Source: Octopus sinensis (taxonomy: Eukaryota). From it: a stretch of 45,379 nucleotides of DNA. Every line of letters begins with the position of its first letter. Positions within the stretch are counted from its first letter, which is position 1. The position numbers and the translations under genes were made by a program. The notes beneath the pieces were generated by a model that did not search any database, was not told where the DNA came from, and saw nothing but the letters and a program-made list of their open reading frames with translations. This document shows positions 1 through 35,129 of the stretch, one piece after another. The stretch covers positions 1 through 45,379 of the forward strand of contig NW_021834994.1 in assembly GCF_006345805.1 (NCBI RefSeq), in the 5' to 3' direction.

Positions 1-1072
1 ATACTGAAATCAAAGTTCCTTATGCGTTCATATTTAGACGCGTTCTCTATTTTTCTCTATACGTTCTTGTATAGAAATTGTTTCTTTGCACTGGTAGATG
101 GGGAAAACTGTGAAATTTGGTCGGATATTACCTGCACATCTCCCTATGTATTCACTCAAAGGAACTTGTCTGTATTGTGGGAACCGGATCTGTTCCTTAT
201 GTGTGGTTCTGTGTCAGTGTCATACTTGTCTGTCCTATATAGTTATGTCCACAAACTGAGCAAGTTATAACATAAATTAGATTCTCGGATGCACAAGTGA
301 AGTTCATTTTAATTGCGAACCTCTCTCCTTGTTTGAATAGGAATTCTGAGCCTTCCGGTATGTTGGAGCATGTTCCAGAGTTTGGGTGTCCACATTTTTT
401 AACCGTTGGTTTTGTGGTTGTTGTGTAAAAGTTCGAATCTGTGTGAAGTATTTTCTGCGATTTGTATTGCATTTTGCATTTGATGAATTTATATGTTTTC
501 AGTATTTTGTTCATTTTGGGATCTCTAGTGAGCATGGGTAGATTTTGTACAATAGCGTTGTATGCCTCATTGTTTCTAGGGTTGTGAGTTGAAATATACA
601 GTTGTGTCTTGAGATGAGGTGTGATGTTACGTTTTGATGCCTTTGGTGTTTTAATGTCTAATTTCTTAGCACGCTTAATTCCATCGTCTTTAAGTGAGGT
701 TAGTGAGGGTGGATATTGTCTTTCAGTCAGGGATATTCTGAGGTTTTGAAGACGAAGGTCCTGAGTATTTCTCTCAGACACTGTTATACAGATCCTTTGT
801 GCCAAATTAAAGGGGATATTTCTTTTGGTGCGTTTCGAGTGGCATGAACTAAACAGGAGACATTACTTCGAGTCTGTTGGTTTATGATAGATACCAGTTA
901 TAACTTGGTTGTTAACTTTTTTTATCATTATTTCCAAGAAAGGGAGCTGTTCTTTGCTTTATTCCATTATGAATTAAATGTTAGGGTTTAAACTATTTCG
1001 TGTTGATTTGAATTCCAAAAGTTTATCAATGGTCTCCTTGTTCTTGTGTATTTCAGGTAGGCCATAAAAAGA
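1..1072 (-). mobile_element. Penelope-like retroelement fragment (RT N-terminal motif, RT thumb, GIY-YIG endonuclease), decayed
   Basis: Minus-strand translation gives FYGLPEIHK (about 1044-1070), then LNPNI*FIME*SKEQLPFLEI...IYHKPTD...NIPFNLAQRI, then CGHPNSGTC...FTCASENLIYVITCSVCGHNYIGQT. These are typical PLE RT and GIY-YIG motifs; stops and frameshifts are present. Confidence 0.88.
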
Positions 1073-11044: not shown

Positions 11045-12245
11045 GTCCGTAGAAGAAAGCGTCACAAAAATATGTAGTTTATCCATCCCTTTCTTTCTTA
11101 ACGTAAAAAACGTCTGTAGGTAGGGCATTCCTTAAGTTAATAGATAAGCATTTCACAAGTTCACATAGGTACGTATGCATTTTCAAGTCACAGCCTTAGG
11201 GTCTGATTTATCTGTGCCCCCAATATTAAGAGCATTCTAGTTAGCACCTCTAAACAACGAGCGGAGGCTGGATGTTCATGTAGGGAACATAGCAGATGCC
11301 CAGTGAGAAGCCACTGCGAAACCAAGGGAGTCGTCTATGAGGCTGAGGTGCTGGCCGATCCTAACAGCATCAGTAACAGCAGCAGCTCTCCAAACGGCCA
11401 GTACAGCAGGAGAGATGACAATACCAGTAGTAACAGCAATAGAAACACGAACAGAATCAGCGGCACCATCGTCGCCAGAGATAACAACAACAACAACGAC
11501 AGTAATGGCAGTATCCCGAATGGAAATAGAAGCAGAGCCATCGTCAATGATATCTATAACAGCAGTGGCAGCGCCTCCATCAACGATAATGATTATAACA
11601 ACAACACCATTACCAACACCTGCAGTGGCGGCACCATAACCATCGCCACCTCTAATGATGCCAACAGCAACAGCGCCAATTCTAACAACAGCGATAACAG
11701 CAACGCCAACAGCAACGCCAGCACACACACCACACGAGCACGGAGATACATCGGTTGCTCCGGTAACACATTCAAACATCGCCTCTCCAACCACAGATCT
11801 TCCTTCAGGATGCCGGAAAGGAAAAACGTTACGTCACCAGCCAGCCATGTATGGCAGCTGAAAGACTGCGAGATTCCATACACAATAATGTGGACAATTC
11901 TAGAAAATCCAGGCCCCGACATGAACGGGACCAAGCGTTGTAGCCTATGCGTCGTGGAGCGGGTGATGATTCTTAAAGACTCTCTCGACTCGGGGAACAT
12001 CCTTAACTCCAGAACGGGGTTTCCGGACCGCGCTTGCATTTCAGTAAATTCCAGCTGACCTATTGGAACCAACAAGTTAACAGGGCCACTTGCGTACGAT
12101 AACCAAAGGGAGACAATCCCCTCTTGTTGAAATTGGATAGCGAGGCTATTTCAGCATTCATATCGTAGAGAGGCCTTAAGCTAACTGGTTTTGGAATCTG
12201 ATTTTACACCGTAAACCAAAACGCTTTATGGACATGGAACCCGGC
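11045..12245 (+). mobile_element. Penelope-like element 3' portion: linker, Zn-binding CxC...CP...C motif, GIY-YIG endonuclease, 3' terminal repeat
   Basis: Translation across frameshifts: RRRKR...TSVGRAFLKLIDKHF...CAPNIKSIL...GCSCREHSRCPVRSHCETKGVVYEAEV...RYIGCSGNTFKHRLSNHRSSF...HVWQLKD..IPYTIMWTILE...RCSLCVVERVMIL...ILNSR. Confidence 0.88.
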
Positions 12246-12362: not shown

Positions 12363-12789
12363 AACACACACACACACACACACAAACACACATATACATA
12401 TATATATATATATATATAGTTAATCCAAACAAGAAGCACAAAAAAAAACACAACAACACGAGGACGTGGAACAAATATAGTATTATTAGACGCTCAAGAA
12501 AGAAGGAAAGAAGGAGGGTTTATCGTTTCGAGCGGAGCTCTTCGTCGGAAACATAGAAGACGGAAAAATCCAGAGAAGGGAAGACAAAGGGGAAAAAAAC
12601 CAACATATATATATATGATATATATAATATATATATAATATATTATATATATATATATACATATATATATACAAACACGTACATACATACATACATACAT
12701 AAATATATACATATATATATACAGTTAGCGTTCCGCATTTCAGTCGAGTGTGATAGCATTAATGTGGTAACATCGTAGATTTCGTCTTG

Positions 12790-12877
12790 GTATATGCTTG
12801 GCTGATGAAGGTAAAACAAAATATGGGTGAGAGACATATCTTGTAAAACCTGAAACCTGCAGGTCCCACGTTATCCT
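12790..12877 (+). ncRNA. Type I hammerhead ribozyme (family A, copy 1), predicted cleavage after C12865
   Basis: CUGAUGA 12802-12808; stem II AGGU/ACCU extended by ACAAAAUAUG/CAUAUCUUGU; GAAA 12852-12855; palindromic stem III ACCUGCAGGU; GUC triplet; stem I UGG/CCA plus an imperfect extension. Confidence 0.85.
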
Positions 12878-13220
12878 ATTCCGGGTGTTTCATCTTTCAG
12901 ATGTTCTCCCTGGAGGTAAGACGTTTTTTTGCTCTAGTTTGTTGCACACACGCATTTTTGCTAATACATACGCGGTGAAGCTACACATTAACGTCGTATT
13001 TTTACGTTCGCTATTTCCAGTAAATATCGGTACTTAGTTGTGCCATTTATTTACTAATTTGTGTATTTTTCCCTCACGGGCTACTTTTTACTGGAAGGCG
13101 ATACTTTGTATTGCATTACTGATATTTTGAAACTTCTTCACCGTTTCTCGTACTGTTAGCGTTCCGCATTTCAGTCGAGTGTGATAGTATTAATGTGGTA
13201 ACATCGTAGATTTCGTCTTG

Positions 13221-13308
13221 GTATATGCTTGGCTGATGAAGGTAAAACAAAATATGGGTGAGAGACATATCTTGTAAAATCTGAAACCTGCAGGTCCCAC
13301 GTTATCCT
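13221..13308 (+). ncRNA. Type I hammerhead ribozyme (family A, copy 2), predicted cleavage after C13296
   Basis: CUGAUGA 13233-13239; GAAA 13283-13286; stem II AGGU/AUCU (C>U change keeps a G-U pair); GUC triplet. Confidence 0.85.
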
Positions 13309-13658
13309 ATTCCGGGTGTTTCACTCCCCTCCAGCAAAATCAGCGGCTGTCTGTTTTTATATTGAGAGTAGCGACGATTGACTGCCATTTCTAGCAGGTA
13401 GGTTTTTTGTACCGATGAAGCGTAAAGACCCAGAAGCCATGGTTTACTGGTCTTGCCAAGCTGAAGGGGTGTGATTTGCTCACTTATTCGCAATAAATCG
13501 GACACAGGTTGTGCGTCGTCTACGTTTCCCTAGGGTTAGAATGAAGTAACATAGTTCTTTACAGAACAGCCATGTTATAGTGGCAAAAAAATGTTACCGT
13601 CTAATATTGTTACTGCTTATATCTCGTTTAGACATTTTAGGGGTATGTATTTTGGTCG

Positions 13659-13752
<94 letters not shown>

Positions 13753-13769
13753 GAGAGAGGAGGAGGAGG

Positions 13770-13800
<31 letters not shown>

Positions 13801-14393: not shown

Positions 14394-14408
14394 TCGAAGT
14401 TTTATATA

Positions 14409-15406
14409 TTTAGTGAGGGAAGAAATGGAGCTGAACGAAGATTTTACAAAATTCCTTTTTATTATTTTCTACATATGTTTCAAAGGCTGCAAATTCCCTA
14501 ATTCGGATTGAATAAGGAGACCATTTTGCAGCTTTCTCTTCAGGAAAATCCAGGAACTTAAATCTCAAAACAAATGCGCAGCAAGCTTTTCGACAAACGC
14601 TCTCTAGGAGCCCATGGTATGAATGGCACAAAACTGTCTCTCAATATGCGTTGACGTCACGGTGGGTGAAAGCCGACGAAAAAGTCCGTTGAGATAATTC
14701 GAGGTCAAAATCCGGTTAACATTGGGGAGGGGAAGAATTACAGAAAACCAAAGAGTGTGAATATATTCTGTATAACTAGTGTTAATATTCGAATTGTTTT
14801 AAGAATTAAAGCTATCGTATTTGGGTGTGAGAAACTACCTACATGTATGTGTGTGTGCGCCTATGTATGTGTGGCAGTATGTTTAGAAGCAGCTAGGGAG
14901 AAATATATTGCAGCTCTTGATGGTCAAGCAGCTGATAAAAACCTGTGTCTGTGTGTTCGTCTGTGACCAGTTTATAGAGAGATGACTTGTCAACAAGGGG
15001 AGTATAATCCCTGATAGTGTTTCTAAATAAGTAGCAGATCATACGCTAAAAGGGGAGTAATTTCCCCTTTCAAATTTAATTCAAAATTTTTTCCAAATTT
15101 TTTTCAAAAATTTTTTTCTTTCTTAGGACATCAAGGTGTTAAATATCTTAGACTTCAATTGTATGCAAGAAATGTATGCCGTTTTGTGCCATTCATACCA
15201 TGGGCTCCCAGAGAGCGTTTGTCGAAAAGCTGCCTGCGCATTTGTTTTGAGATTTAAGTTCCTGGATTTTCCTGAAGAGAAAGCTGCAAAATGGTCTCCT
15301 TATTCAATCCGAATTAGGGAATTTGCAGCCTTTGAAACATATGTAGAAAATAATAAAAAGGAATTTTGTAAAATCTTCGTTCAGCTCCATTTCTTCCCTC
15401 ACTAAA
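14409..15406. mobile_element. About 1 kb non-autonomous element with 226-bp terminal inverted repeats in TA context (unclassified)
   Basis: 14409-14634 is the near-exact reverse complement of 15181-15406; both ends are flanked by TATATA. Confidence 0.75.
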
Positions 15407-15413
15407 TATATAT

Positions 15414-15513
<100 letters not shown>

Positions 15514-16379
15514 TGCATGTATATATATATATATATATATATATATCTATGTATATATATATATATATATATTTGTATGCATATATATAATATATATATA
15601 TATATATGTATATATAAATTTAAAATAATAAGGGTGAAAAATTGAATATTAATTTAATTAATATCAATTTAAAACCAGTGGTCTAGCATATAGAAAAATC
15701 TGTAGATTCAAAAAATTATATTACATATTACCACTAGGAAAGGAATTTTCCTTTCTTAGTGGTAAGACCATAGGGGGTCGACTTCTAGCATAATGGGCGT
15801 CCACTTAGTGGTCATCCCTCTTATATGTACGTTATATATATACATACACACACACACAGAGATTTCGCCGGATTTGCAGTTTGCCAACATCACGTATTCG
15901 TAAAGGAACGGAGATGAATCATTTCGCCACTCCACGTGTTGTATGCACACAGTATGAAAACCACAGGTGAGTCTGCCCGGACACACGCCACACCGCCGCC
16001 TACTGGCGAATACGCTTCGCATATACGTTAAGTATTTGTGATCAATAATGCTTTGTGCACCAGCACTGCTTCAATTTTTTATTTGAATTTATCCATGCGT
16101 ATACATTGTCGGTAAGGACAAACATCAAAGAATAACAACAGTAGCCATGACAACAACAGTCACCGGAACAGCATCAGCATCAGCAGCAGCAGCAGCAGCA
16201 GCAGCATCATTATCAACAACAATGTGTGTTATATAGTGGTTAAAGACGGCGGGCTAACGAATTTCTGAGCTAATTCCCATTGTCCCTTGTGTTGTTTTCT
16301 CCCTTTATGCCTCAGTAGTCAATAGAGAAAAGATTATTATTATTATTATTATCATTATTATTATTTTTTTTTTATTATT

Positions 16380-22539: not shown

Positions 22540-23118
22540 AATAATCCTTTCTATTATAGGCACAAGGCCCGAAATTTGGGAGGAGGACTAGTCGATTATA
22601 TCGACCTCAGTGTTTCACTGGTACTTAATTTATCGACCCCGAAAGGATGAAAGGCAAAGTAGACCTCGGCGGAATTTGAACTCAGAACGTAGCGGCAGAC
22701 GAATTACCTATTTTTTTACTAACCACAAGGGGCTACACACTGAGACGACAAAGAAGGACAGACAAACGGATTAAGTCGATTACATCGACCCCAGTGCGTA
22801 ACTGGTACTTAATTTATCGATCCCCGAAAGGATGAAAGGCAAAGTCGACCTCAGCGGAATTTGAATTCAGAACGTAACGGCAGACGAAATACCTATTTCT
22901 TGACTAACCACAAGGGGCTAAACACAGAAGGGACAAACAAGGACAGACAAACGGATTAAGTCGATTATATCGACCCCAGTGCGTAACTGGTACTTATTTA
23001 ATCGACCGCGAAAGGATGAAAGGTAAAGTCGACCTCGGCGGAATTTGAACACAGAACGTAACGACAGACGAAATACCGCTAAGCATTTCGACCGCCTGCT
23101 TACGTTTCTACCAGCTTG

Positions 23119-23430: not shown

Positions 23431-23474
23431 CACTACGATCGTTTCTTGTCACTTTTATGGACATTCATCAGGTG
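23431..23474 (-). ncRNA. Minimal PLE-type type I hammerhead ribozyme
   Basis: Minus strand CAC-CUGAUGA-AUGUC-cauaaaagu-GACAA-GAAA-CGAUCG-UA-GUG: palindromic stem III ACGAUCGU, GUA site, 3-bp stem I; A-A mismatch at the base of stem II. Confidence 0.65.
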
Positions 23475-23648: not shown

Positions 23649-24492
23649 TAGCAGAATTGCCCGGCGTTGCTCGGGGCTGAATTGCTTGAAAGTACTGTTA
23701 ATGATTGCACTGAATTATGGTGATTATTCAGGCAAATATTGATATAAGTTTACGGTGGGAGATAAGGACTTAACGATCAAACGTGTGCCATTGCATTGTT
23801 TTGGGGGAACCAAATTTCTGATGAGCATTATAGGGGCACCAACTTTAAGTTTGAGAAAGTGTGGTGGTAGTCCGGGGTGCTCAAAGGAATTGAGTACCTC
23901 TATTGGATAGTTGATGACGTCCTCTGGGTCAGGAGTTGTATCGATAGACTGATATACATAGACTTCCCCAGGAATGAGTTTTAGCATTTCATCATTAATA
24001 TGGTGAACAGTTTTATTCCTCGGGGCCAGTATAGCCTTTTTGCCAATCCAATCCATATTCTGATAATTAGCTTGTAGATCTGGGAACACTGCATCTCTGA
24101 GATCAGAAGGCGTCTTAACAATGGTACAAATGGAATCGATGGCAATATTACCATTTTCATCCCCTGCTATTTTGCCTTCGCCAAGTGAAAGGAGGGTGTG
24201 AGGAAATGCTGCTGATGTGATATTACGTCGCATATGAGCTCGCATATTGGTGTGAAGTTTGAGAGTTACTTCCCTTTATTAAAAAAAATATGCATTAAAA
24301 TGAAAAAAAATGATGGTAAATTATTTGTAAAATCATAGACTCATCGTAGACGCGCGCTAATACCTAGAAGGGATCGATATGAATCACAACTATAAGATAC
24401 CCGGTTTTGGTTAAACTGCATCGCAAAATGTGGGAGTAGTAGGAATCTAAATCGGAAGTAGACAGACACACAACCTCTTTTATATATATATA
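23648..24492 (-). mobile_element. Helitron deletion derivative carrying a PIF1-like helicase fragment (about 23724-24270)
   Basis: LHTNMR...AILAPRNKTVHHIN...NYPIEVLNSFEHPGLPPHFLKLKVGAPIMLIRNLVPPKQCNGTRL; same 5' region as the 7101/7630 copies; 3' hairpin plus CTAG at 23648. Confidence 0.93.
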
Positions 24493-25172
24493 TTTTCGTC
24501 CTAAAAAACTTGTATGGATTGAATGGTTACCTCTATGGAAATATATACACGCACATTATACATACATGTGTGTATAGATGAATATATAAATACATTTAAA
24601 TATCTATATACACTTTTGGGCGATCTTTCTGTTTCTTAGAGATAACTTTAGATCTTATTTTCGTCCTAAAAAACTTTGTATGGAGTGAATGGTTACCTCT
24701 ATGGAAATATATACACACACGTTATACATATATGTGTGCATAGATGAATATATAAATACATTTATATATCTATATACACTTTTGGGCGATCTTTGTGCTA
24801 CTTAGAGATAACTTTAGATCTTATTTTCGTCCTAAAAAACTTTGTGCGGAGTGAATGGTTACGTCTATGAAAATATATACACACACATTATACATACATC
24901 TATGTATAGATGAATATATAAATACATTTAAATATCTATATACACTTTTGGGCAATCTTTCTGCTACTTGTATATACTTTAGATCTTATATTCGTCCTAA
25001 AAAATTTTGTATGGAGTGAACGGTTACCTCTATGGAAATATATACACACACATTATACATACATCTGTGTATAGATGAATATATAAATACATTTAAATAT
25101 CTATATACACTTTTGGGCGATCTTCCTGCTGCTTGGATATATACTTTAGGTCTTATATTCGTCCTAAAAAAC
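24493..25172. repeat. About 166-bp minisatellite, four units plus a partial
   Basis: ttcgtcctaaaaaac recurs at about 24495, 24660, 24826, 24991 and 25158. Confidence 0.92.
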
Positions 25173-25233
25173 TTTCCTGTCACACACTCACGCACACGCA
25201 CACACACACACACACACGCACCCTCACACACAC

Positions 25234-26921: not shown

Positions 26922-28043
26922 GACAGAAACTGAAAGACACCCGTCGTAGATATATATGCGTGTGTGTGTATGCATTTTTGTCTGTGTTTGCCCCTCCCCC
27001 ACTATTGCTTGATAACCGATGTTGGTGTGTTTACGTCCCCGCAACCTAGTGGTTCGGCAATAGAGTCCGATAGAATATATACTGAGTATAGACAGAATAA
27101 TGTGCTTTGATAATTCCATTTCAGAAGATTGTAACAACGGTGAAAAAAAATCAATGTTAATTTATTGATGCATTTGGACAAGTCTATGTTTGTATTCTGA
27201 GACAATTGCAAAGAAGTGTTTAAAAACTTTTCAAAACTCTACAAAAATCCGGTACAAATTCTTCTTTCTCCGAAATGTCGTTTACTCTTTCCTCAACCTG
27301 ATACATATATGATTAATGAGAGAGAAGGTAGATGGAAGATACGAGAACGTTTGTTGATCCCTACAATTGTTTTGACCCATCAAACATCGATTCCTCACGG
27401 GTAGAATACTGAACAGGCGTTATTTTATCGAAATAAATCTTGTCACCCGAGGAGATACAACTACACCGACGGATACACACAAAACCAGATGTTCAGTTTC
27501 ACACCCGTGAGGAATCGATGCTAGATAGGTCGAAACAATTGCGGGTATCAATGAACATTCTTCCGTCTCTCTCATTAATCAAATACACACACACAAACAC
27601 ACACACACACTTGCACAAACACATATTTATAAAAATATGTAATTTATTTTACTTGTTTCTGTTGTATTAGACTTCGGCCAAACTGGGGCAGCGCTTCTAA
27701 ATCTTTTAGTCGAATGAATCGACCTAGGTACGTCTTCTTAAGCCTGGTACATATTCTATCGGTCTCTTTTATTGCTGTTGCATACCAACACAATGTCTCT
27801 CTCTGTCTCACATACAGACAGACAGACACACACATATATATACGACAGGCTTCTTTCAATTTCGCTCGACCAAATGTGCTCGTAAAGCTTTCGTCAACCT
27901 GAAGCTATAGTAGATGACACTTGCTTAAACTGTCAGGTAGTGACCGAGTAACGTGGCTGGAAAGCAGACTTCTTACCACAAAGCCAACCAGCACCTACAC
28001 ACACACACACATATATATATGTATGAATACATATATGTATATA

Positions 28044-28594: not shown

Positions 28595-29737
28595 GACAGA
28601 AACTGAAAGACACACCGTAAGATATATATGCGTGTGTGTGTATGCATTTTTGTCTGTGTTTGCCCCTCCCCCACTATTGTGATAACCGATGTTGGGGGGT
28701 TTACGTCCCCGCAACCTAGTGGTTCGGCAATAGAGTCCGATAGAATATATACTGAGTATAGACAGAATAATGTGCTTTGATAATTCCATTTCAGAAGATT
28801 GTAACAACGGGGTGAAAAAAAATCAATGTTAATTTATTGATGCATTTGGACAAGTCTATGTTTGTATTCTGAGACAATGCAAAGAAGTGTTTAAAAACTT
28901 TTCAAAACTCTACACAAAATCCGGTACAAATTCTTCTTTCTCCGAAATGTCGTTTACTCTTTCCTCAACCTGATACATATATGATTAATGAGAGAGAAGG
29001 TAGGATGGGAAGATACGAGAACGTTTGTTGATCCCTACAATTGTTTTGACCATCAAACATCGATTCCTCACGGGTAGAATACTGAACAGGCGTTATTTTA
29101 TCGAAATAAATCTTGTCACCCGAGGAGATACAACTACACCGACGGATACACACAAAACCAGATGTTCAGTTTCACACCCGTGAGGAATCGATGCTAGATA
29201 GGTCGAAACAATTGCGGGTATCAATGACCATTCTTCCGTCTCCTCATTAATCAAATACACACACACAAACACACACACACTTGCACAAACACATATTTAT
29301 AAAAATATGTAATTTATTTTACTTGTTTCTGTTGTATTAGACTTCGGCCAAACTGGGGCAGCGCTTCTAAATCTTTTAGTCGAATGAATCGACCTAGGTA
29401 CGTCTTCTTAAGCTGGTACATATTCTATCGGTCTCTTTTATTGCTGTTGCATACCAACACAATGTCTCTCTCTGTCTCACATACAGACAGACAGACACAC
29501 ACATATATATACGACAGGCTTCTTTCAATTCGCTAGACCAAATGTGCTCGTAAAGCTTTCGTCAACCTGAAGCTATAGTAGATGACACTTGCTTAAACTG
29601 TCAGGTAGTGACCGAGTAACGTGGTGGAAAGCAGACTTCTTACCACAAAGCCAACCAGCACCTACACACACACACACATTATATATGTATGAATACATAT
29701 ATGTATATATATATGTATAATATATATATATATATAT

Positions 29738-33042: not shown

Positions 33043-33548
33043 TAACGATAAATTCAACTTACGTTGTAAGTCAAGAAACGAAGTTTGCTTTAGAAGCGTT
33101 GAGATGTATTCAAAGATACAGATAAGGAAATATATATATATATATATATACATATATACATAGATACAGATAAGGGAATAATTTTATTCTCAAACACAGG
33201 ATAATGCTAATAATATAGCATGAACAAGATAAACTAGCCTGTACATCTCAGCGCTTCTAAAGCAAACTTTGTTGACTTTCAACGAAAATTGAATTTAACG
33301 TACTATAGCGTCTTGTAAAGTTAAATTTATAATATATATCCTAAATTTGAAGACGAATTTTTCGTTGGGGCACTTTCTTGACGTGTAATCACAGGGATGT
33401 GAGTTCGTGTCACATGGCTGGCCGCCGACAACTTTTTCTGCAAATATGGATGGTTTATCCTGTTCATGGTAAATTTTTAGCTTTATCCTGAGTTTGAGAA
33501 TAAAATTATTTCCTTATTTGTATGTATATAATATATATATATATATAT

Positions 33549-33599
<51 letters not shown>

Positions 33600-33733
33600 A
33601 TATATGGAATCGGCGGCTTATATTTATTTGCTGCCGATAAATTTGGCGCGAGTGCGATGATTTGAAAATTTTAGGTCAGATATTGCCGAGGCAGGGAGAG
33701 AAGTGCCTCGTGAAAATATCTGTTCCGATCTGG

Positions 33734-33851
33734 CTGTTTTCTTACTGACGAATCCATCGGCCTATGGAAGATTGGCTTGATTTAATTTAATCAGGTGGTG
33801 GTTACCATTAAACAATAGATGAAACGGTGTGCATCGTATAAGAAATTACAG
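33734..33851 (+). ncRNA. Type I hammerhead ribozyme (family B, copy 1), predicted cleavage after A33838
   Basis: Stem I UUUCUUA(33738-44)/UAAGAAA(33839-45) plus CUGU/ACAG; CUGACGA 33745-51; stem II AUCCAU/AUAGAU with a long insert; GAAA 33821-24; stem III ACGGUG/CAUCGU; GUA triplet. Confidence 0.88.
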
Positions 33852-34226
33852 GGTAAATGTTTTTTTAATTTTCTCCTGGTTTGCGGAATTAATGTTATTT
33901 TGCGGTTGAAGCTTTGGCTGTTATTTCTAGTGGGTGAATGGCCTATTATGGCCGTTCCTTGATTGTGATGTTGAACTTATAAATGGTCTATGACTATTTA
34001 ATTTTTTCCCACTAGGCCGCTGGTGGCAAAAAAAATTCTACAAAATTTTTTGCCACCCTATATTGATTAATTATGAATTTTCTGGTTAATTCCGTAGTGG
34101 AATCGGCGGCTTATATTTATTTGCTGCCGATAAATTTGGCGCGAGTGCGATGATTTGAAAATTTTAGGTCAGATATTGCCGAGGCAGGGAGAGAAGTGCC
34201 TCGTGAAAATATCTGTTCCGATCTGG

Positions 34227-34341
34227 CTGTTTTCTTACTGACGAATCTATCGGCCTATGGAAGATTGGCTTGATTTAATTTAATCAGGTTGGTTTACCAT
34301 TAAACAATAGATGAAACGGTGCATCGTATAAGAAATTACAG
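34227..34341 (+). ncRNA. Type I hammerhead ribozyme (family B, copy 2), predicted cleavage after A34328
   Basis: CUGACGA 34238-44; perfect stem II AUCUAU/AUAGAU; GAAA 34313-16; loopless near-palindromic stem III ACGGUGCAUCGU; same 7-bp stem I. Confidence 0.9.
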
Positions 34342-34555
34342 GGTAAATGTTTTTTTAATTTTCTCCTGGTTTGCGGAATTAATGTTATTTTGCGGTTGAA
34401 GCTTTGGCTGTTATTTCTAGTGGGTGAATGGCCTATTATGGCCGTTCCTTGATTGTGATGTTGAACTTATAAATGGTCTATGACTATTTAATTTTTTCCC
34501 ACTAGGCCGCTGGTGGCAAAAAAATTCTACAAAATTTTTTGCCACCCTATATTGA

Positions 34556-34639
<84 letters not shown>

Positions 34640-34704: not shown

Positions 34705-35129
34705 ATATGCATATATACATACATATATGTACGTACCTACATCTATGTGTATATATACATGCATATATGGGTACAGGACACCAAAAAAAGTCGAACACAA
34801 TGAGAAACGAAAACAAACACAAAACCAAGGAAATGGACATTTTTCTTAAACAACGAAAAAATAGAGTACAAGACATACAACACAAGGAATATTCTCCTTC
34901 TTCAGTGGATGAAACAGAGGCGGCTGAAGAAGGGGAATTTTCCTTGTGTTGTATGTCTTGTACTCTGTTTTTTCGTTGTTTAAGAAAATTGGTCCATTTC
35001 CTTGGTTTTGAGTTTATGTTTTCGTTTCTCATTGTGTTCGACGATTTTTTTGGTGTCCTGTACCCATTTATGCATGTATATATACATGTAGAGGTAGGTA
35101 CGTACATATATGTATGTATATATGCATAT
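34705..35129. repeat. Long inverted repeat, arms of about 200 bp, 18-nt spacer (34906-34923)
   Basis: 34705-34905 is the reverse complement of 34924-35129 with scattered mismatches and indels. Confidence 0.92.

What the first reader, a model, noticed from the sequence alone, without database searches (positions are those of the whole stretch)
33605..34563. Retrozyme-like system B: tandem ~490-nt monomers, each with a complete hammerhead ribozyme
Seen: two near-identical units, each with every conserved hammerhead core nucleotide (CUGACGA...GAAA...GUA), a 7-bp stem I with a bulged extension, stem II carrying a branched ~60-nt insert, and a palindromic stem III. The rest of the monomer folds extensively: AUCGGCGGC/GCUGCCGAU, CAGAUAUU/AAUAUCUG enclosing CGAGGCA/UGCCUCG, CUAGUGGG/CCCACUAG enclosing GAAUGGCC/GGCCGUUC and AAAUGGUC/GACUAUUU, and GGUGGCAAAA/UUUUGCCACC. 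Frequent G-U pairs suggest selection on RNA rather than DNA. Established: tandem type I hammerhead repeats are the hallmark of metazoan non-LTR retrozymes, which release monomers that circularise. Inference: double cleavage would release a 490-nt RNA (33839-34328), a candidate non-coding circRNA replicon. This is longer than the metazoan examples I recall, and I do not recall a cephalopod description.
Basis: partly seen in the sequence, partly recalled or inferred. Interest (0 to 1): 0.92.

Follow-up and report, generated by a model that had tools for sequence, protein, structure and literature searches.

The report
Tandem hammerhead-ribozyme repeat (retrozyme-like element)
Two head-to-tail copies of a 490-base non-coding repeat, each with a complete self-cutting hammerhead RNA motif, sit inside a TA microsatellite; it looks like an ordinary member of the known animal "retrozyme" / Penelope-derived class, with an unusually long arm on the ribozyme.

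Summary
Positions 33605-34563 are 1.95 head-to-tail copies (97% identical) of a ~490-nt unit. Each copy has a full type I hammerhead core. Cutting after A33838 and A34328 would release exactly 33839-34328 (490 nt). A strict hammerhead descriptor hits this site once in the window, against 0.005 hits per dinucleotide shuffle. The unit is non-coding, 37% G+C and strongly self-paired (z = -5.5). It is inserted in a (TA)n run and no RT/GIY-YIG ORF is attached.

Best reading: a dimeric genomic copy of a non-autonomous, Penelope-like-element-dependent retroelement, that is, a metazoan non-LTR retrozyme.

Caveats:
- No Rfam hammerhead model matches, even at E<=10.
- The 10.1-11.1 pair is A-U, not the usual G-C.
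- Copy 1 has a mismatch in helix II and a 2-nt insertion in loop III.
- No other copy was found in the window or in any collection I could search, so copy number, expression and circularity are untested.
- The cephalopod origin could not be verified.
- Published retrozyme families span 51-972 bp, so 490 nt is not unusual.

The window holds two further hammerhead-bearing repeat systems beside (TA)n runs. New member of a known kind; moderate interest.

The parts
33605..34563 (+). Whole array: 1.95 head-to-tail copies of the ~490-nt unit (2 units minus 23 nt)
   Evidence: Alignment 97% identical; BLASTN self-hits
33839..34328 (+). Monomer defined by the two predicted cleavage sites (490 nt): non-coding, 37% G+C, 62% of bases paired in the circular MFE
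   Evidence: Sequence; fold -149.9 kcal/mol, z = -5.5; circular fold -146.5; longest ORF in the array 47 aa
33734..33851 (+). Hammerhead copy 1 (weaker). Helix I 33738-33744/33839-33845, core 33745-33751, helix II 33752-33757/33815-33820 with a C.A mismatch, GAAA 33821-33824, helix III 33824-33828/33833-33837, cleavage after A33838
   Evidence: Relaxed descriptor. The hammerhead-compatible fold is 5.3 kcal/mol above the MFE
34227..34341 (+). Hammerhead copy 2 (better). Helix I 7 bp + UU bulge + 4 bp, core 34238-34244, helix II 6 bp, GAAA 34313-34316, helix III 4 bp + UGCA loop, cleavage after A34328
   Evidence: Strict descriptor hit, 7/6/4 bp. The hammerhead-compatible fold is 2.1 kcal/mol above the MFE
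34251..34306 (+). 56-nt extension of helix II: a long imperfect hairpin in which 6 of the 14 distal pairs are G-U, so it exists only in the plus-sense RNA
   Evidence: Folds; the minus-strand fold lacks it
34075..34097 (+). 23-nt segment present once, at the junction between the units; it is missing from the 3' end of the array
   Evidence: Alignment, sequence
34058..34084 (+). Largest predicted single-stranded A/U-rich stretch of the monomer (CUAUAUUGAUUAAUUAUGAAUUUUCUG). The 3' end of the array (..UUAAUUAU) falls inside its equivalent in unit 2, so it is a candidate priming site on a (TA)n nick (inference)
   Evidence: MFE structures; array end
33521..33604 (.). Upstream (TA)n flank, the presumed target microsatellite
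   Evidence: TRF; junction sequence
34564..34636 (.). Downstream (TA)n flank followed by (AG)n
   Evidence: TRF; junction sequence

Best explanation
This is a genomic dimer of a small non-coding retroelement of the metazoan non-LTR retrozyme class, that is, a non-autonomous derivative of Penelope-like elements (PLEs).

Shown here: two head-to-tail ~490-nt units, each with a complete type I hammerhead; no ORF; low G+C; a highly self-paired monomer; (TA)n on both sides.

Inferred from the published model for this class:
1. Read-through or internal transcription gives an oligomeric plus-strand RNA.
2. The two hammerheads cut after A33838 and A34328. They probably act as a double hammerhead: helix III alone is weak (-1.2 to -2.7 kcal/mol) but quasi-palindromic (self-duplex about -20 kcal/mol).
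3. [quoted passage not shown]
4. In the circle, an alternative pairing (GUGCGAUGA with the 3' strand of helix III) hides the ribozyme.
5. A PLE reverse transcriptase/GIY-YIG nuclease nicks a (TA)n run and copies the circular or multimeric RNA. Priming may occur in the unpaired AU-rich loop ..UAUAUUGAUUAAUUAU... This gives greater-than-unit-length tandem insertions such as this 2-units-minus-23-nt copy.
For: - Tandem structure at 97% identity.
- Complete core and three helices in type I order, with cleavage sites exactly 490 nt apart.
- Motif far above chance: 1 strict hit against 0.005 per shuffle; 7 relaxed hits against 0.17 +/- 0.43.
- Monomer fold z = -5.5, 62% of bases paired.
- G+C 37%.
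- ORFs of at most 47 aa.
- Only 23 nt lie between the repeats, so no RT/EN ORF is enclosed.
- No ribozyme of any Rfam class on the minus strand.
- Helix III hairpin is weak and its self-duplex is strong.
- Both ends abut perfect (TA)n runs, while only 5% of the window lies that close to one.
- Two other hammerhead-bearing repeat systems in the same window have PLE-style tandem or inverted layouts and also end at (TA)n.
- Literature: defining features of non-LTR retrozymes (PMC7229834); (TA)n insertion bias of PLE clades (PMC8557442); retrozymes as pLTR derivatives with sizes of 51-972 bp (10.64898/2026.07.22.740005).
Against: - No Rfam hammerhead model matches, even at E<=10 on a 124-nt stretch.
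- The 10.1-11.1 pair is A-U, whereas G-C is reported as highly conserved in canonical and PLE hammerheads (PMC4209133).
- Helix II is not capped by a loop where the usual loop 1-loop 2 contact is made.
- Copy 1 is degraded: a C.A mismatch, a TG insertion, and a hammerhead fold 5.3 kcal/mol above the MFE. Release of the monomer needs both sites to cut.
- Only this one array is known. There is no other copy in the 45-kb window, in two scans each of metagenome and viral contigs, or among 5.8 billion predicted proteins searched with the unit's open stretches.
- No expression data.
- No confirmed PLE ORF in the window.
Confidence: 0.72

Rival explanations
1. The array is the remnant of an autonomous Penelope-like element: two pseudo-LTRs left after the RT/GIY-YIG ORF was deleted. 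Equivalently, the 490-nt unit is just the terminal repeat of a PLE that exists intact elsewhere in the genome, not an independent non-autonomous family.
For: - PLE insertions are partial tandems with a hammerhead in each pseudo-LTR and prefer microsatellites (PMC8557442; PMC4209133).
- System A in the same window has exactly a pLTR-internal-pLTR layout.
- Retrozymes and pLTRs are reported to be homologous.
Against: - The whole unit is repeated, with only 23 nt that are not duplicated, and no trace of coding sequence.
- The hammerhead differs from the PLE minimal type: 4-bp helix III, 7-bp helix I, and no extra nucleotide between A9 and 10.1.
- No PLE ORF was confirmed in the window.
Confidence: 0.15
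2. A fossil or purely DNA-level tandem duplication (a minisatellite-like repeat). The hammerhead motif is a relic or inactive, and no defined RNA is made.
For: - Only 1.95 copies and a single locus are known.
- No Rfam match.
- A-U at 10.1-11.1, and copy 1 carries three lesions in the ribozyme.
- The differences between the units cluster in the ribozyme, as if it were not under constraint.
Against: - The motif is complete and very unlikely by chance.
- Copy 2 has intact helices and a hammerhead fold within 2.1 kcal/mol of the MFE.
- The unit is far more structured than its shuffles.
- The helix II extension relies on G-U pairs that exist only in plus-sense RNA.
- The precise placement inside (TA)n fits retrotransposition better than unequal crossing-over.
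Confidence: 0.1
3. An integrated cDNA copy of an exogenous viroid-like or deltavirus-like circular RNA agent that uses hammerheads for rolling-circle RNA replication.
For: Size, strong self-pairing and a greater-than-unit-length tandem copy would all be expected of a circular RNA template.
Against: - Ribozyme in one polarity only: no hammerhead descriptor hit on the minus strand of the array and no Rfam ribozyme hit there.
- No ORF.
- No match in the viral contig collection.
- Low G+C and type I hammerhead topology are typical of genomic retrozymes (PMC7229834).
Confidence: 0.03

Closest known systems
Metazoan non-LTR retrozymes (Cervera & de la Pena 2020, NAR, PMC7229834; for example Mytilus galloprovincialis ~350-390-nt repeats, Acropora ~230 nt, axolotl 330/350 nt)
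   Same: - Type I hammerhead in every unit of a short head-to-tail repeat
- Low G+C
- No ORF, LTR, PBS or PPT
- Highly self-paired monomer
- Weak palindromic helix III, which suggests dimeric action
- Dimers to multimers at a locus
   Different: - The unit is 490 nt, above the 170-400 nt of that paper but inside the 51-972 bp reported in 2026.
- Helix II is extended by a 56-nt hairpin instead of being 4 bp plus a loop.
- A10.1-U11.1 instead of G-C.
- No recognisable loop 1-loop 2 contact.
- Not detected by Rfam models.
- Expression and circularity are unknown here.
[quoted passage not shown] 2021, PMC8557442)
   Same: - Tandem arrangement
- Palindromic helix III with likely dimeric cleavage
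- Longer-than-canonical helix II
- Insertion into microsatellites, (TA)n in particular
   Different: - No RT/GIY-YIG ORF between the repeats.
- Helix III is present (4 bp) rather than minimal.
- Helix I is long (7+4 bp) rather than 2-5 bp.
- No unpaired nucleotide between A9 and 10.1.
- G10.1-C11.1 is not kept.
Amphibian satellite 2 / Schistosoma Sm-alpha hammerhead repeats
   Same: [quoted passage not shown] The newt ribozyme works as a dimer because helix III is weak.
   Different: Those have compact canonical helices I and II with conserved tertiary contacts and are present in very long arrays. Here there are two units and an extended helix II.
Plant LTR retrozymes (Cervera et al. 2016, PMC4918200)
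   Same: A non-autonomous retroelement that passes through a hammerhead-processed circular RNA.
   Different: Plant elements have type III hammerheads inside ~350-bp LTRs, a tRNA-Met PBS, a PPT, 4-bp TSDs and G+C above 55%. None of these is seen here.

Membership tests
Hammerhead ribozyme, type I | Conserved core: C3 U4 G5 A6 N7 G8 A9, G12 A13 A14, A15.1-U16.1, H17 | tested here: met
   CUGACGA / GAAA / ..U-A are present in both copies at 33745-33751, 33821-33824, 33837-33838 and at 34238-34244, 34313-34316, 34327-34328
Hammerhead ribozyme, type I | Three helices around the core, with helix I open and helices II and III closed | tested here: met
   Copy 2 has 7/6/4 bp. Copy 1 has 7/3(+mismatch+2)/5 bp. 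The order 5'-I-core-II-GAAA-III-UH-I-3' is type I
Hammerhead ribozyme, type I | G10.1-C11.1 pair (highly conserved rather than strictly defining) | tested here: not met
   A34245-U34312 and A33752-U33820. Conservation is stated in PMC4209133
Hammerhead ribozyme, type I | Loop 1-loop 2 tertiary contact | tested here: inconclusive
   Helix I has a UU bulge after 7 bp. Helix II continues after 6 bp through an internal loop into a long hairpin. There is no canonical capping loop. Some mussel retrozyme hammerheads also lack these contacts (PMC7229834)
Hammerhead ribozyme, type I | Match to the Rfam hammerhead covariance models | tested here: not met
   No hammerhead hit at gathering score, at E<=10 on 1.4 kb, or at E<=10 on 124 nt. 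The 56-nt helix II insert is the likely reason (inference)
Hammerhead ribozyme, type I | Site-specific self-cleavage | not testable with these tools
   Needs in vitro transcription of the dimer
Metazoan non-LTR retrozyme | Short head-to-tail repeats (dimer to multimer), each unit with a type I hammerhead | tested here: met
   1.95 units of ~490 nt, with a hammerhead in each
Metazoan non-LTR retrozyme | Low G+C (<45-50%), non-coding, no LTR or internal unique region | tested here: met
   G+C 37%. Longest ORF 47 aa and longest stop-free stretch 61 codons. Only 23 nt are not duplicated. PBS and PPT were not searched for specifically
Metazoan non-LTR retrozyme | Monomer RNA highly self-paired | tested here: met
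   Circular MFE -146.5 kcal/mol, 62% of bases paired, z = -5.5 against 100 shuffles
Metazoan non-LTR retrozyme | Dispersed multi-copy family in the genome | tested here: inconclusive
   No second locus in the 45-kb window. The source genome is not in any searchable collection. Scans of metagenome and viral contigs and of the protein database were negative
Metazoan non-LTR retrozyme | Expressed as linear and circular monomer RNA | not testable with these tools
   No transcriptome data on hand
Autonomous Penelope-like element | RT plus GIY-YIG ORF between the hammerhead-bearing pseudo-LTRs | tested here: not met
   23 nt between the repeats and no ORF above 47 aa. Pfam scans of neighbouring ORFs were negative
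Autonomous Penelope-like element | Insertion bias for microsatellites, (TA)n in some clades | tested here: met
   Both junctions lie in perfect (TA)n runs, while 5% of window positions are that close to one. The bias is described in PMC8557442
Viroid-like / deltavirus-like circular RNA replicon | Self-cleaving ribozymes in both polarities (or a delta-antigen ORF) | tested here: not met
   No descriptor hit and no Rfam ribozyme hit on the minus strand of the array. No ORF

The most novel reading that the evidence does not exclude
The hammerhead here is a distinct, active structural variant that current covariance models miss: helix II extended by a ~50-nt hairpin, A/G10.1-U11.1, and a palindromic helix III. 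At least three unrelated non-coding repeat families in this genome share it, at 12.7-13.3 kb, 14.4-15.4 kb and 33.6-34.6 kb. All three would be mobilised as circular RNAs by a (TA)n-targeting Penelope-like element. That would give a lineage, possibly cephalopods, in which retrozymes are very dense (three in 45 kb), and a concrete system for linking retrozyme circles to one PLE clade and to microsatellite-primed reverse transcription.
Probability: 0.3. Interest if true: 0.55.

Novelty: new member of a known kind. Interest (0 to 1): 0.38.

Why it matters
If it is active, the locus adds another animal lineage to the genome-encoded pathway in which a ribozyme makes circular RNA. Molluscs are already represented by mussels. 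I found no open-access paper that describes cephalopod retrozymes, but the source organism was not verified.

It also shows that hammerheads with long helix II insertions escape Rfam-based annotation, so retrozyme censuses built on those models undercount.

The clean (TA)n junctions bear on how PLE enzymes prime on microsatellites. The 3' end of the insertion lies in the monomer's largest unpaired AU-rich loop, which gives a testable hypothesis. This extends known biology; it does not add a new kind of system.

Tried and rejected
- Rfam at gathering score over the whole window, and at E<=10 on 1.4 kb and on 124 nt: no hammerhead hit. The low-scoring miRNA-like hits at 34.70-34.77 kb are AT/GT-rich palindrome noise.
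- TRF did not report the array. Alignment and BLAST did.
- Search for relatives: two exact-pattern scans each of metagenome and viral contigs; exact look-ups of the unit's 47-aa and 42-aa ORFs; a chimeric query made of all open stretches of the unit against 5.8 billion proteins. All were empty.
- Organism identification: homologues of a LINE-like ORF reach at most 68% identity and lie in unnamed ENA assemblies. Four 20-kb loci from those assemblies share no DNA similarity with the window or the unit. The organism stays unverified.
- PLE partner in the window: ORFs 197-805 (-) and 11303-12058 (+) look GIY-YIG-like by eye, but they have no Pfam or PDB match and only a few unnamed homologues. Not confirmed.
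- Strand asymmetry as proof of selection on RNA: the plus strand folds better and has many G-U pairs, but the z-scores of the two strands are similar. I treat this as suggestive only.
- The motif at 23434-23471 (-) was rejected as a relative: 3-bp helix I, A.A at 10.1/11.1, and not repeated.
- I did not build a covariance model. With only two near-identical copies there is no covariation to model.

Full report
**1. What is there**

Positions 33605-34563 are two head-to-tail copies of one unit. The alignment of 33605-34093 with 34094-34563 shows 97% mean column identity. BLASTN of 33839-34328 against the window finds only the two adjoining partial copies, at 99.6% and 97.4% identity, and nothing else above noise.

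The array equals two units minus 23 nt. The segment GAATTTTCTGGTTAATTCCGTAG (34075-34097) occurs once, at the junction between the units, and is missing from the 3' end.

The array is bounded by (TA)n on both sides: 33521-33604 upstream, and 34564-34598 downstream, followed by (AG)n. TRF did not list the array because it has fewer than two copies and the period is near TRF's 500-nt limit.

**2. The ribozyme**

Each unit has the elements in type I order.

Copy 2:
- helix I UUUCUUA/UAAGAAA (34231-34237 / 34329-34335)
- a UU bulge and a further 4 bp (34227-34230 / 34338-34341)
- CUGACGA (34238-34244)
- helix II AUCUAU/AUAGAU (34245-34250 / 34307-34312), enclosing 56 nt
- GAAA (34313-34316)
- helix III A-U, C-G, G-C, G.U with loop UGCA (34316-34327)
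- A17 at 34328

Copy 1 has the same core (33745-33751, 33821-33824, A17 = 33838). It differs by a C33755.A33817 mismatch in helix II, a one-base bulge in the distal part of helix II, and a TG insertion in loop III.

Chance is an unlikely explanation:
- A strict descriptor (core plus helices of at least 5, 4 and 3 bp, helix II insert up to 110 nt) hits copy 2 only. The mean is 0.005 hits per dinucleotide-preserving shuffle of the whole window on both strands, and 1 of 200 shuffles had a hit.
- A relaxed descriptor finds 7 sites, against 0.17 +/- 0.43 in shuffles.

**3. Evidence against a working hammerhead**

- No Rfam hammerhead model matches. This holds at gathering score on the whole window, at E<=10 on 1.4 kb, and at E<=10 on a 124-nt stretch centred on copy 2. 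The 56-nt insert in helix II is the probable cause, but that is my inference.
- The 10.1-11.1 pair is A-U. G10.1-C11.1 is described as highly conserved in canonical and PLE hammerheads (PMC4209133).
- There is no capping loop on helix II where the loop 1-loop 2 contact normally forms. The mussel retrozyme hammerheads also lack most of those conserved contact nucleotides (PMC7229834).
- The secondary structure compatible with catalysis is 2.1 kcal/mol above the MFE for copy 2 but 5.3 kcal/mol above it for copy 1.
- Helix III as a hairpin is worth only -1.2 kcal/mol (copy 2) or -2.7 kcal/mol (copy 1). The segment ACGGUGCAUCGU is a quasi-palindrome with self-duplex energies of -19.5 and -20.8 kcal/mol, and -14.7 kcal/mol between the two copies. 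This is the signature of hammerheads that cut as dimers in oligomeric transcripts (Forster et al. 1988, as cited in PMC4209133; axolotl retrozymes in PMC7229834).

**4. The rest of the unit**

The monomer is non-coding. The longest ORF is 47 aa and the longest stop-free stretch is 61 codons. G+C is 37%.

It folds to -149.9 kcal/mol as a linear RNA (z = -5.5; 0 of 100 shuffles fold as well) and to -146.5 kcal/mol as a circle, with 62% of bases paired.

- The helix II insert is one long imperfect hairpin, not a branched one.
- The G-U argument is weaker than stated. The plus-strand fold has 26 G-U pairs and the minus-strand fold has 4, with -146.5 against -110.3 kcal/mol. But the plus strand is G+U-rich and the z-scores are similar, -5.5 and -6.5. 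The distal helix II hairpin is the clearest case: 6 of its 14 pairs are G-U, so it cannot form on the minus strand.

In the MFE structure of the monomer, the 3' strand of helix III pairs with GUGCGAUGA (34148-34156; the same sequence is at 33655-33663 in unit 1) rather than forming the ribozyme. Such an alternative fold would protect a ligated circle from re-cleavage. This is inference, by analogy with viroid-like RNAs.

**5. Context**

No RT or GIY-YIG ORF is attached. The only Pfam hit among ten neighbouring ORFs is a Pif1 2B domain at 23724-24245 (-).

Both junctions of the array lie in perfect (TA)n runs, while only 5% of window positions lie within 10 nt of such a run. PLE clades are reported to prefer microsatellites, with (TA)n stated for Naiads (PMC8557442).

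The 3' end of the array (..GAUUAAUUAU) falls inside the equivalent of the monomer's largest predicted unpaired stretch, CUAUAUUGAUUAAUUAUGAAUUUUCUG (34058-34084). That would allow microhomology priming from a nicked (TA)n. This is inference.

The window holds two further hammerhead-bearing repeat systems:
- Direct 173-nt repeats at 12720-12892 and 13151-13323, 98.3% identical, with motifs at 12802-12865 and 13233-13296.
- Inverted 232-nt repeats at 14403-14634 and 15412-15181, 98.7% identical, with motifs at 14543-14470 (-) and 15272-15345 (+).

They share no sequence with system B beyond the core. They do share the architecture:
- a long helix II (47-nt insert in the first; 12 bp plus a loop in the second)
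- U at 11.1 paired with A or G at 10.1
- a palindromic loop III (UGCA, AUAU)

Their 3' ends abut (TA)n runs. Tandem and inverted layouts of this sort are the described insertion structures of PLEs (PMC8557442).

**6. What it most likely is and how it works**

The features meet the published definition of metazoan non-LTR retrozymes: type I hammerheads in short tandem repeats from dimers upward, low G+C, no LTR/PBS/PPT or coding capacity, and highly self-paired monomers (PMC7229834; PMC7761336).

The life cycle I assume comes from those papers, not from this sequence:
1. transcription of the oligomer
2. double self-cleavage
4. reverse transcription of the circle by a PLE enzyme, giving tandem cDNA insertions

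A 2026 preprint reports that vertebrate retrozymes are sister to PLE pseudo-LTRs and that family consensus lengths run from 51 to 972 bp (10.64898/2026.07.22.740005). So 490 nt is not exceptional. It also means that "retrozyme versus Penelope terminal repeat" is a matter of degree.

**7. What could not be settled**

I found no relative of the unit anywhere:
- two exact-pattern scans each of the metagenome and viral contig collections
- exact look-ups of the unit's two longest ORFs
- a search of 5.8 billion predicted proteins with all open stretches of the unit joined into one query

These collections hardly cover animal genomes, so the negatives say little about copy number.

The source organism was not identified:
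- The closest homologues of a LINE-like ORF are 68% identical and sit in unnamed ENA assemblies.
- Four loci fetched from those assemblies share no DNA similarity with the window.
- The paper library yielded no description of hammerhead retrozymes in cephalopods. The only paper that linked these terms was Craig et al. 2021, on Naiad remnants.

An unexplained detail: 5 of the 6 differences between the two units fall in the 94-nt ribozyme. The binomial p is 0.0016, or 0.028 if the GGTGGTGG/GGTTGGTT patch counts as one event. Possible causes are heterogeneous template RNAs, as seen for mussel retrozyme circles (PMC7229834), reverse-transcription errors in a structured G/U-rich region, or relaxed constraint.

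**8. Verdict**

This is a new member of a known class with a somewhat unusual hammerhead, and its activity is untested.

Noticed in passing
Direct 173-nt repeats 12720-12892 and 13151-13323 are 98.3% identical. Each carries CUGAUGA-AGGU[47 nt]ACCU-GAAA-CCUGCAGG-UC (12802-12865, 13233-13296), with helix I of only 3 bp. The layout is pseudo-LTR-like, with about 260 nt between the repeats and a ~340-nt unique tail that ends at (TA)n(AG)n (13662-13800).
   Followed up: partly
window 14403-15412: A third hammerhead system. Inverted 232-nt repeats (14403-14634 against 15412-15181) are 98.7% identical. Each carries CUGAAGA, a 12-bp helix II with one A.C mismatch, GAAA-C-AUAU-G-UA and a 6-bp helix I (14543-14470 on the minus strand, 15272-15345 on the plus strand). 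It ends at the (TA)n run at 15406-15616. Head-to-head copies are a described PLE insertion structure.
   Followed up: partly
window 33745-33838 vs 34238-34328: Five of the six differences between the two units of system B lie inside the 94-nt ribozyme (p = 0.0016, or 0.028 on a conservative count). All of them weaken copy 1. The cause is unexplained.
   Followed up: partly
window 23434-23471 (-): An isolated hammerhead-like string, CUGAUGA..GAAACGAUCGUA. Helix I has only 3 bp and positions 10.1/11.1 are A.A. It is not repeated and is probably chance or a decayed relic.
   Followed up: partly
window 34705-35129: A nested near-perfect palindrome: arms 34705-34789/35045-35129 are 95% complementary and arms 34821-34905/34924-35008 are 86% complementary. 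It starts ~70 nt downstream of the (AG)n flank. It produces mirrored ORFs on both strands and weak miRNA-like Rfam noise.
   Followed up: no
window 33157-33239 / 33448-33530: An 83-nt inverted repeat (86% complementary) with a 208-nt spacer, immediately upstream of the (TA)n that holds the array. It may be a foldback or MITE-like element.
   Followed up: no
window 197-805 (-) and 11303-12058 (+): ORFs with GIY...YIG-like strings by eye (NLIYVITCSVCGHNYIGQT; GVVYEAEV...YIGCSGNTFKHRLSNH). They could be remnants of a Penelope-like endonuclease. They have no Pfam or PDB match and only five unnamed homologues.
   Followed up: partly
window 23724-24245 (-): An ORF with a Pif1 helicase 2B domain (E = 2.4e-15), probably a Helitron-type remnant.
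   Followed up: no
window 22590-23077, 24491-25175, 27861-27956/29529-29624: Other repeats: 185-nt tandem (2.6 copies), 166-nt tandem (4.1 copies), and 96-nt direct repeats 99% identical and 1668 nt apart (27861-27956 / 29529-29624). There are also very dense (TA)n, (ATT)n and (TGTA)n microsatellites throughout.
   Followed up: no
L002 5071-5116 (+) (ENA ERZ25073763, ctg130239): A compact hammerhead-like motif in an unrelated animal-like contig: CUGACGA-GUGU..AUAC-GAAA-CAAAUUUG-UU, with a 4-bp helix I and G10.1-C11.1.
   Followed up: no
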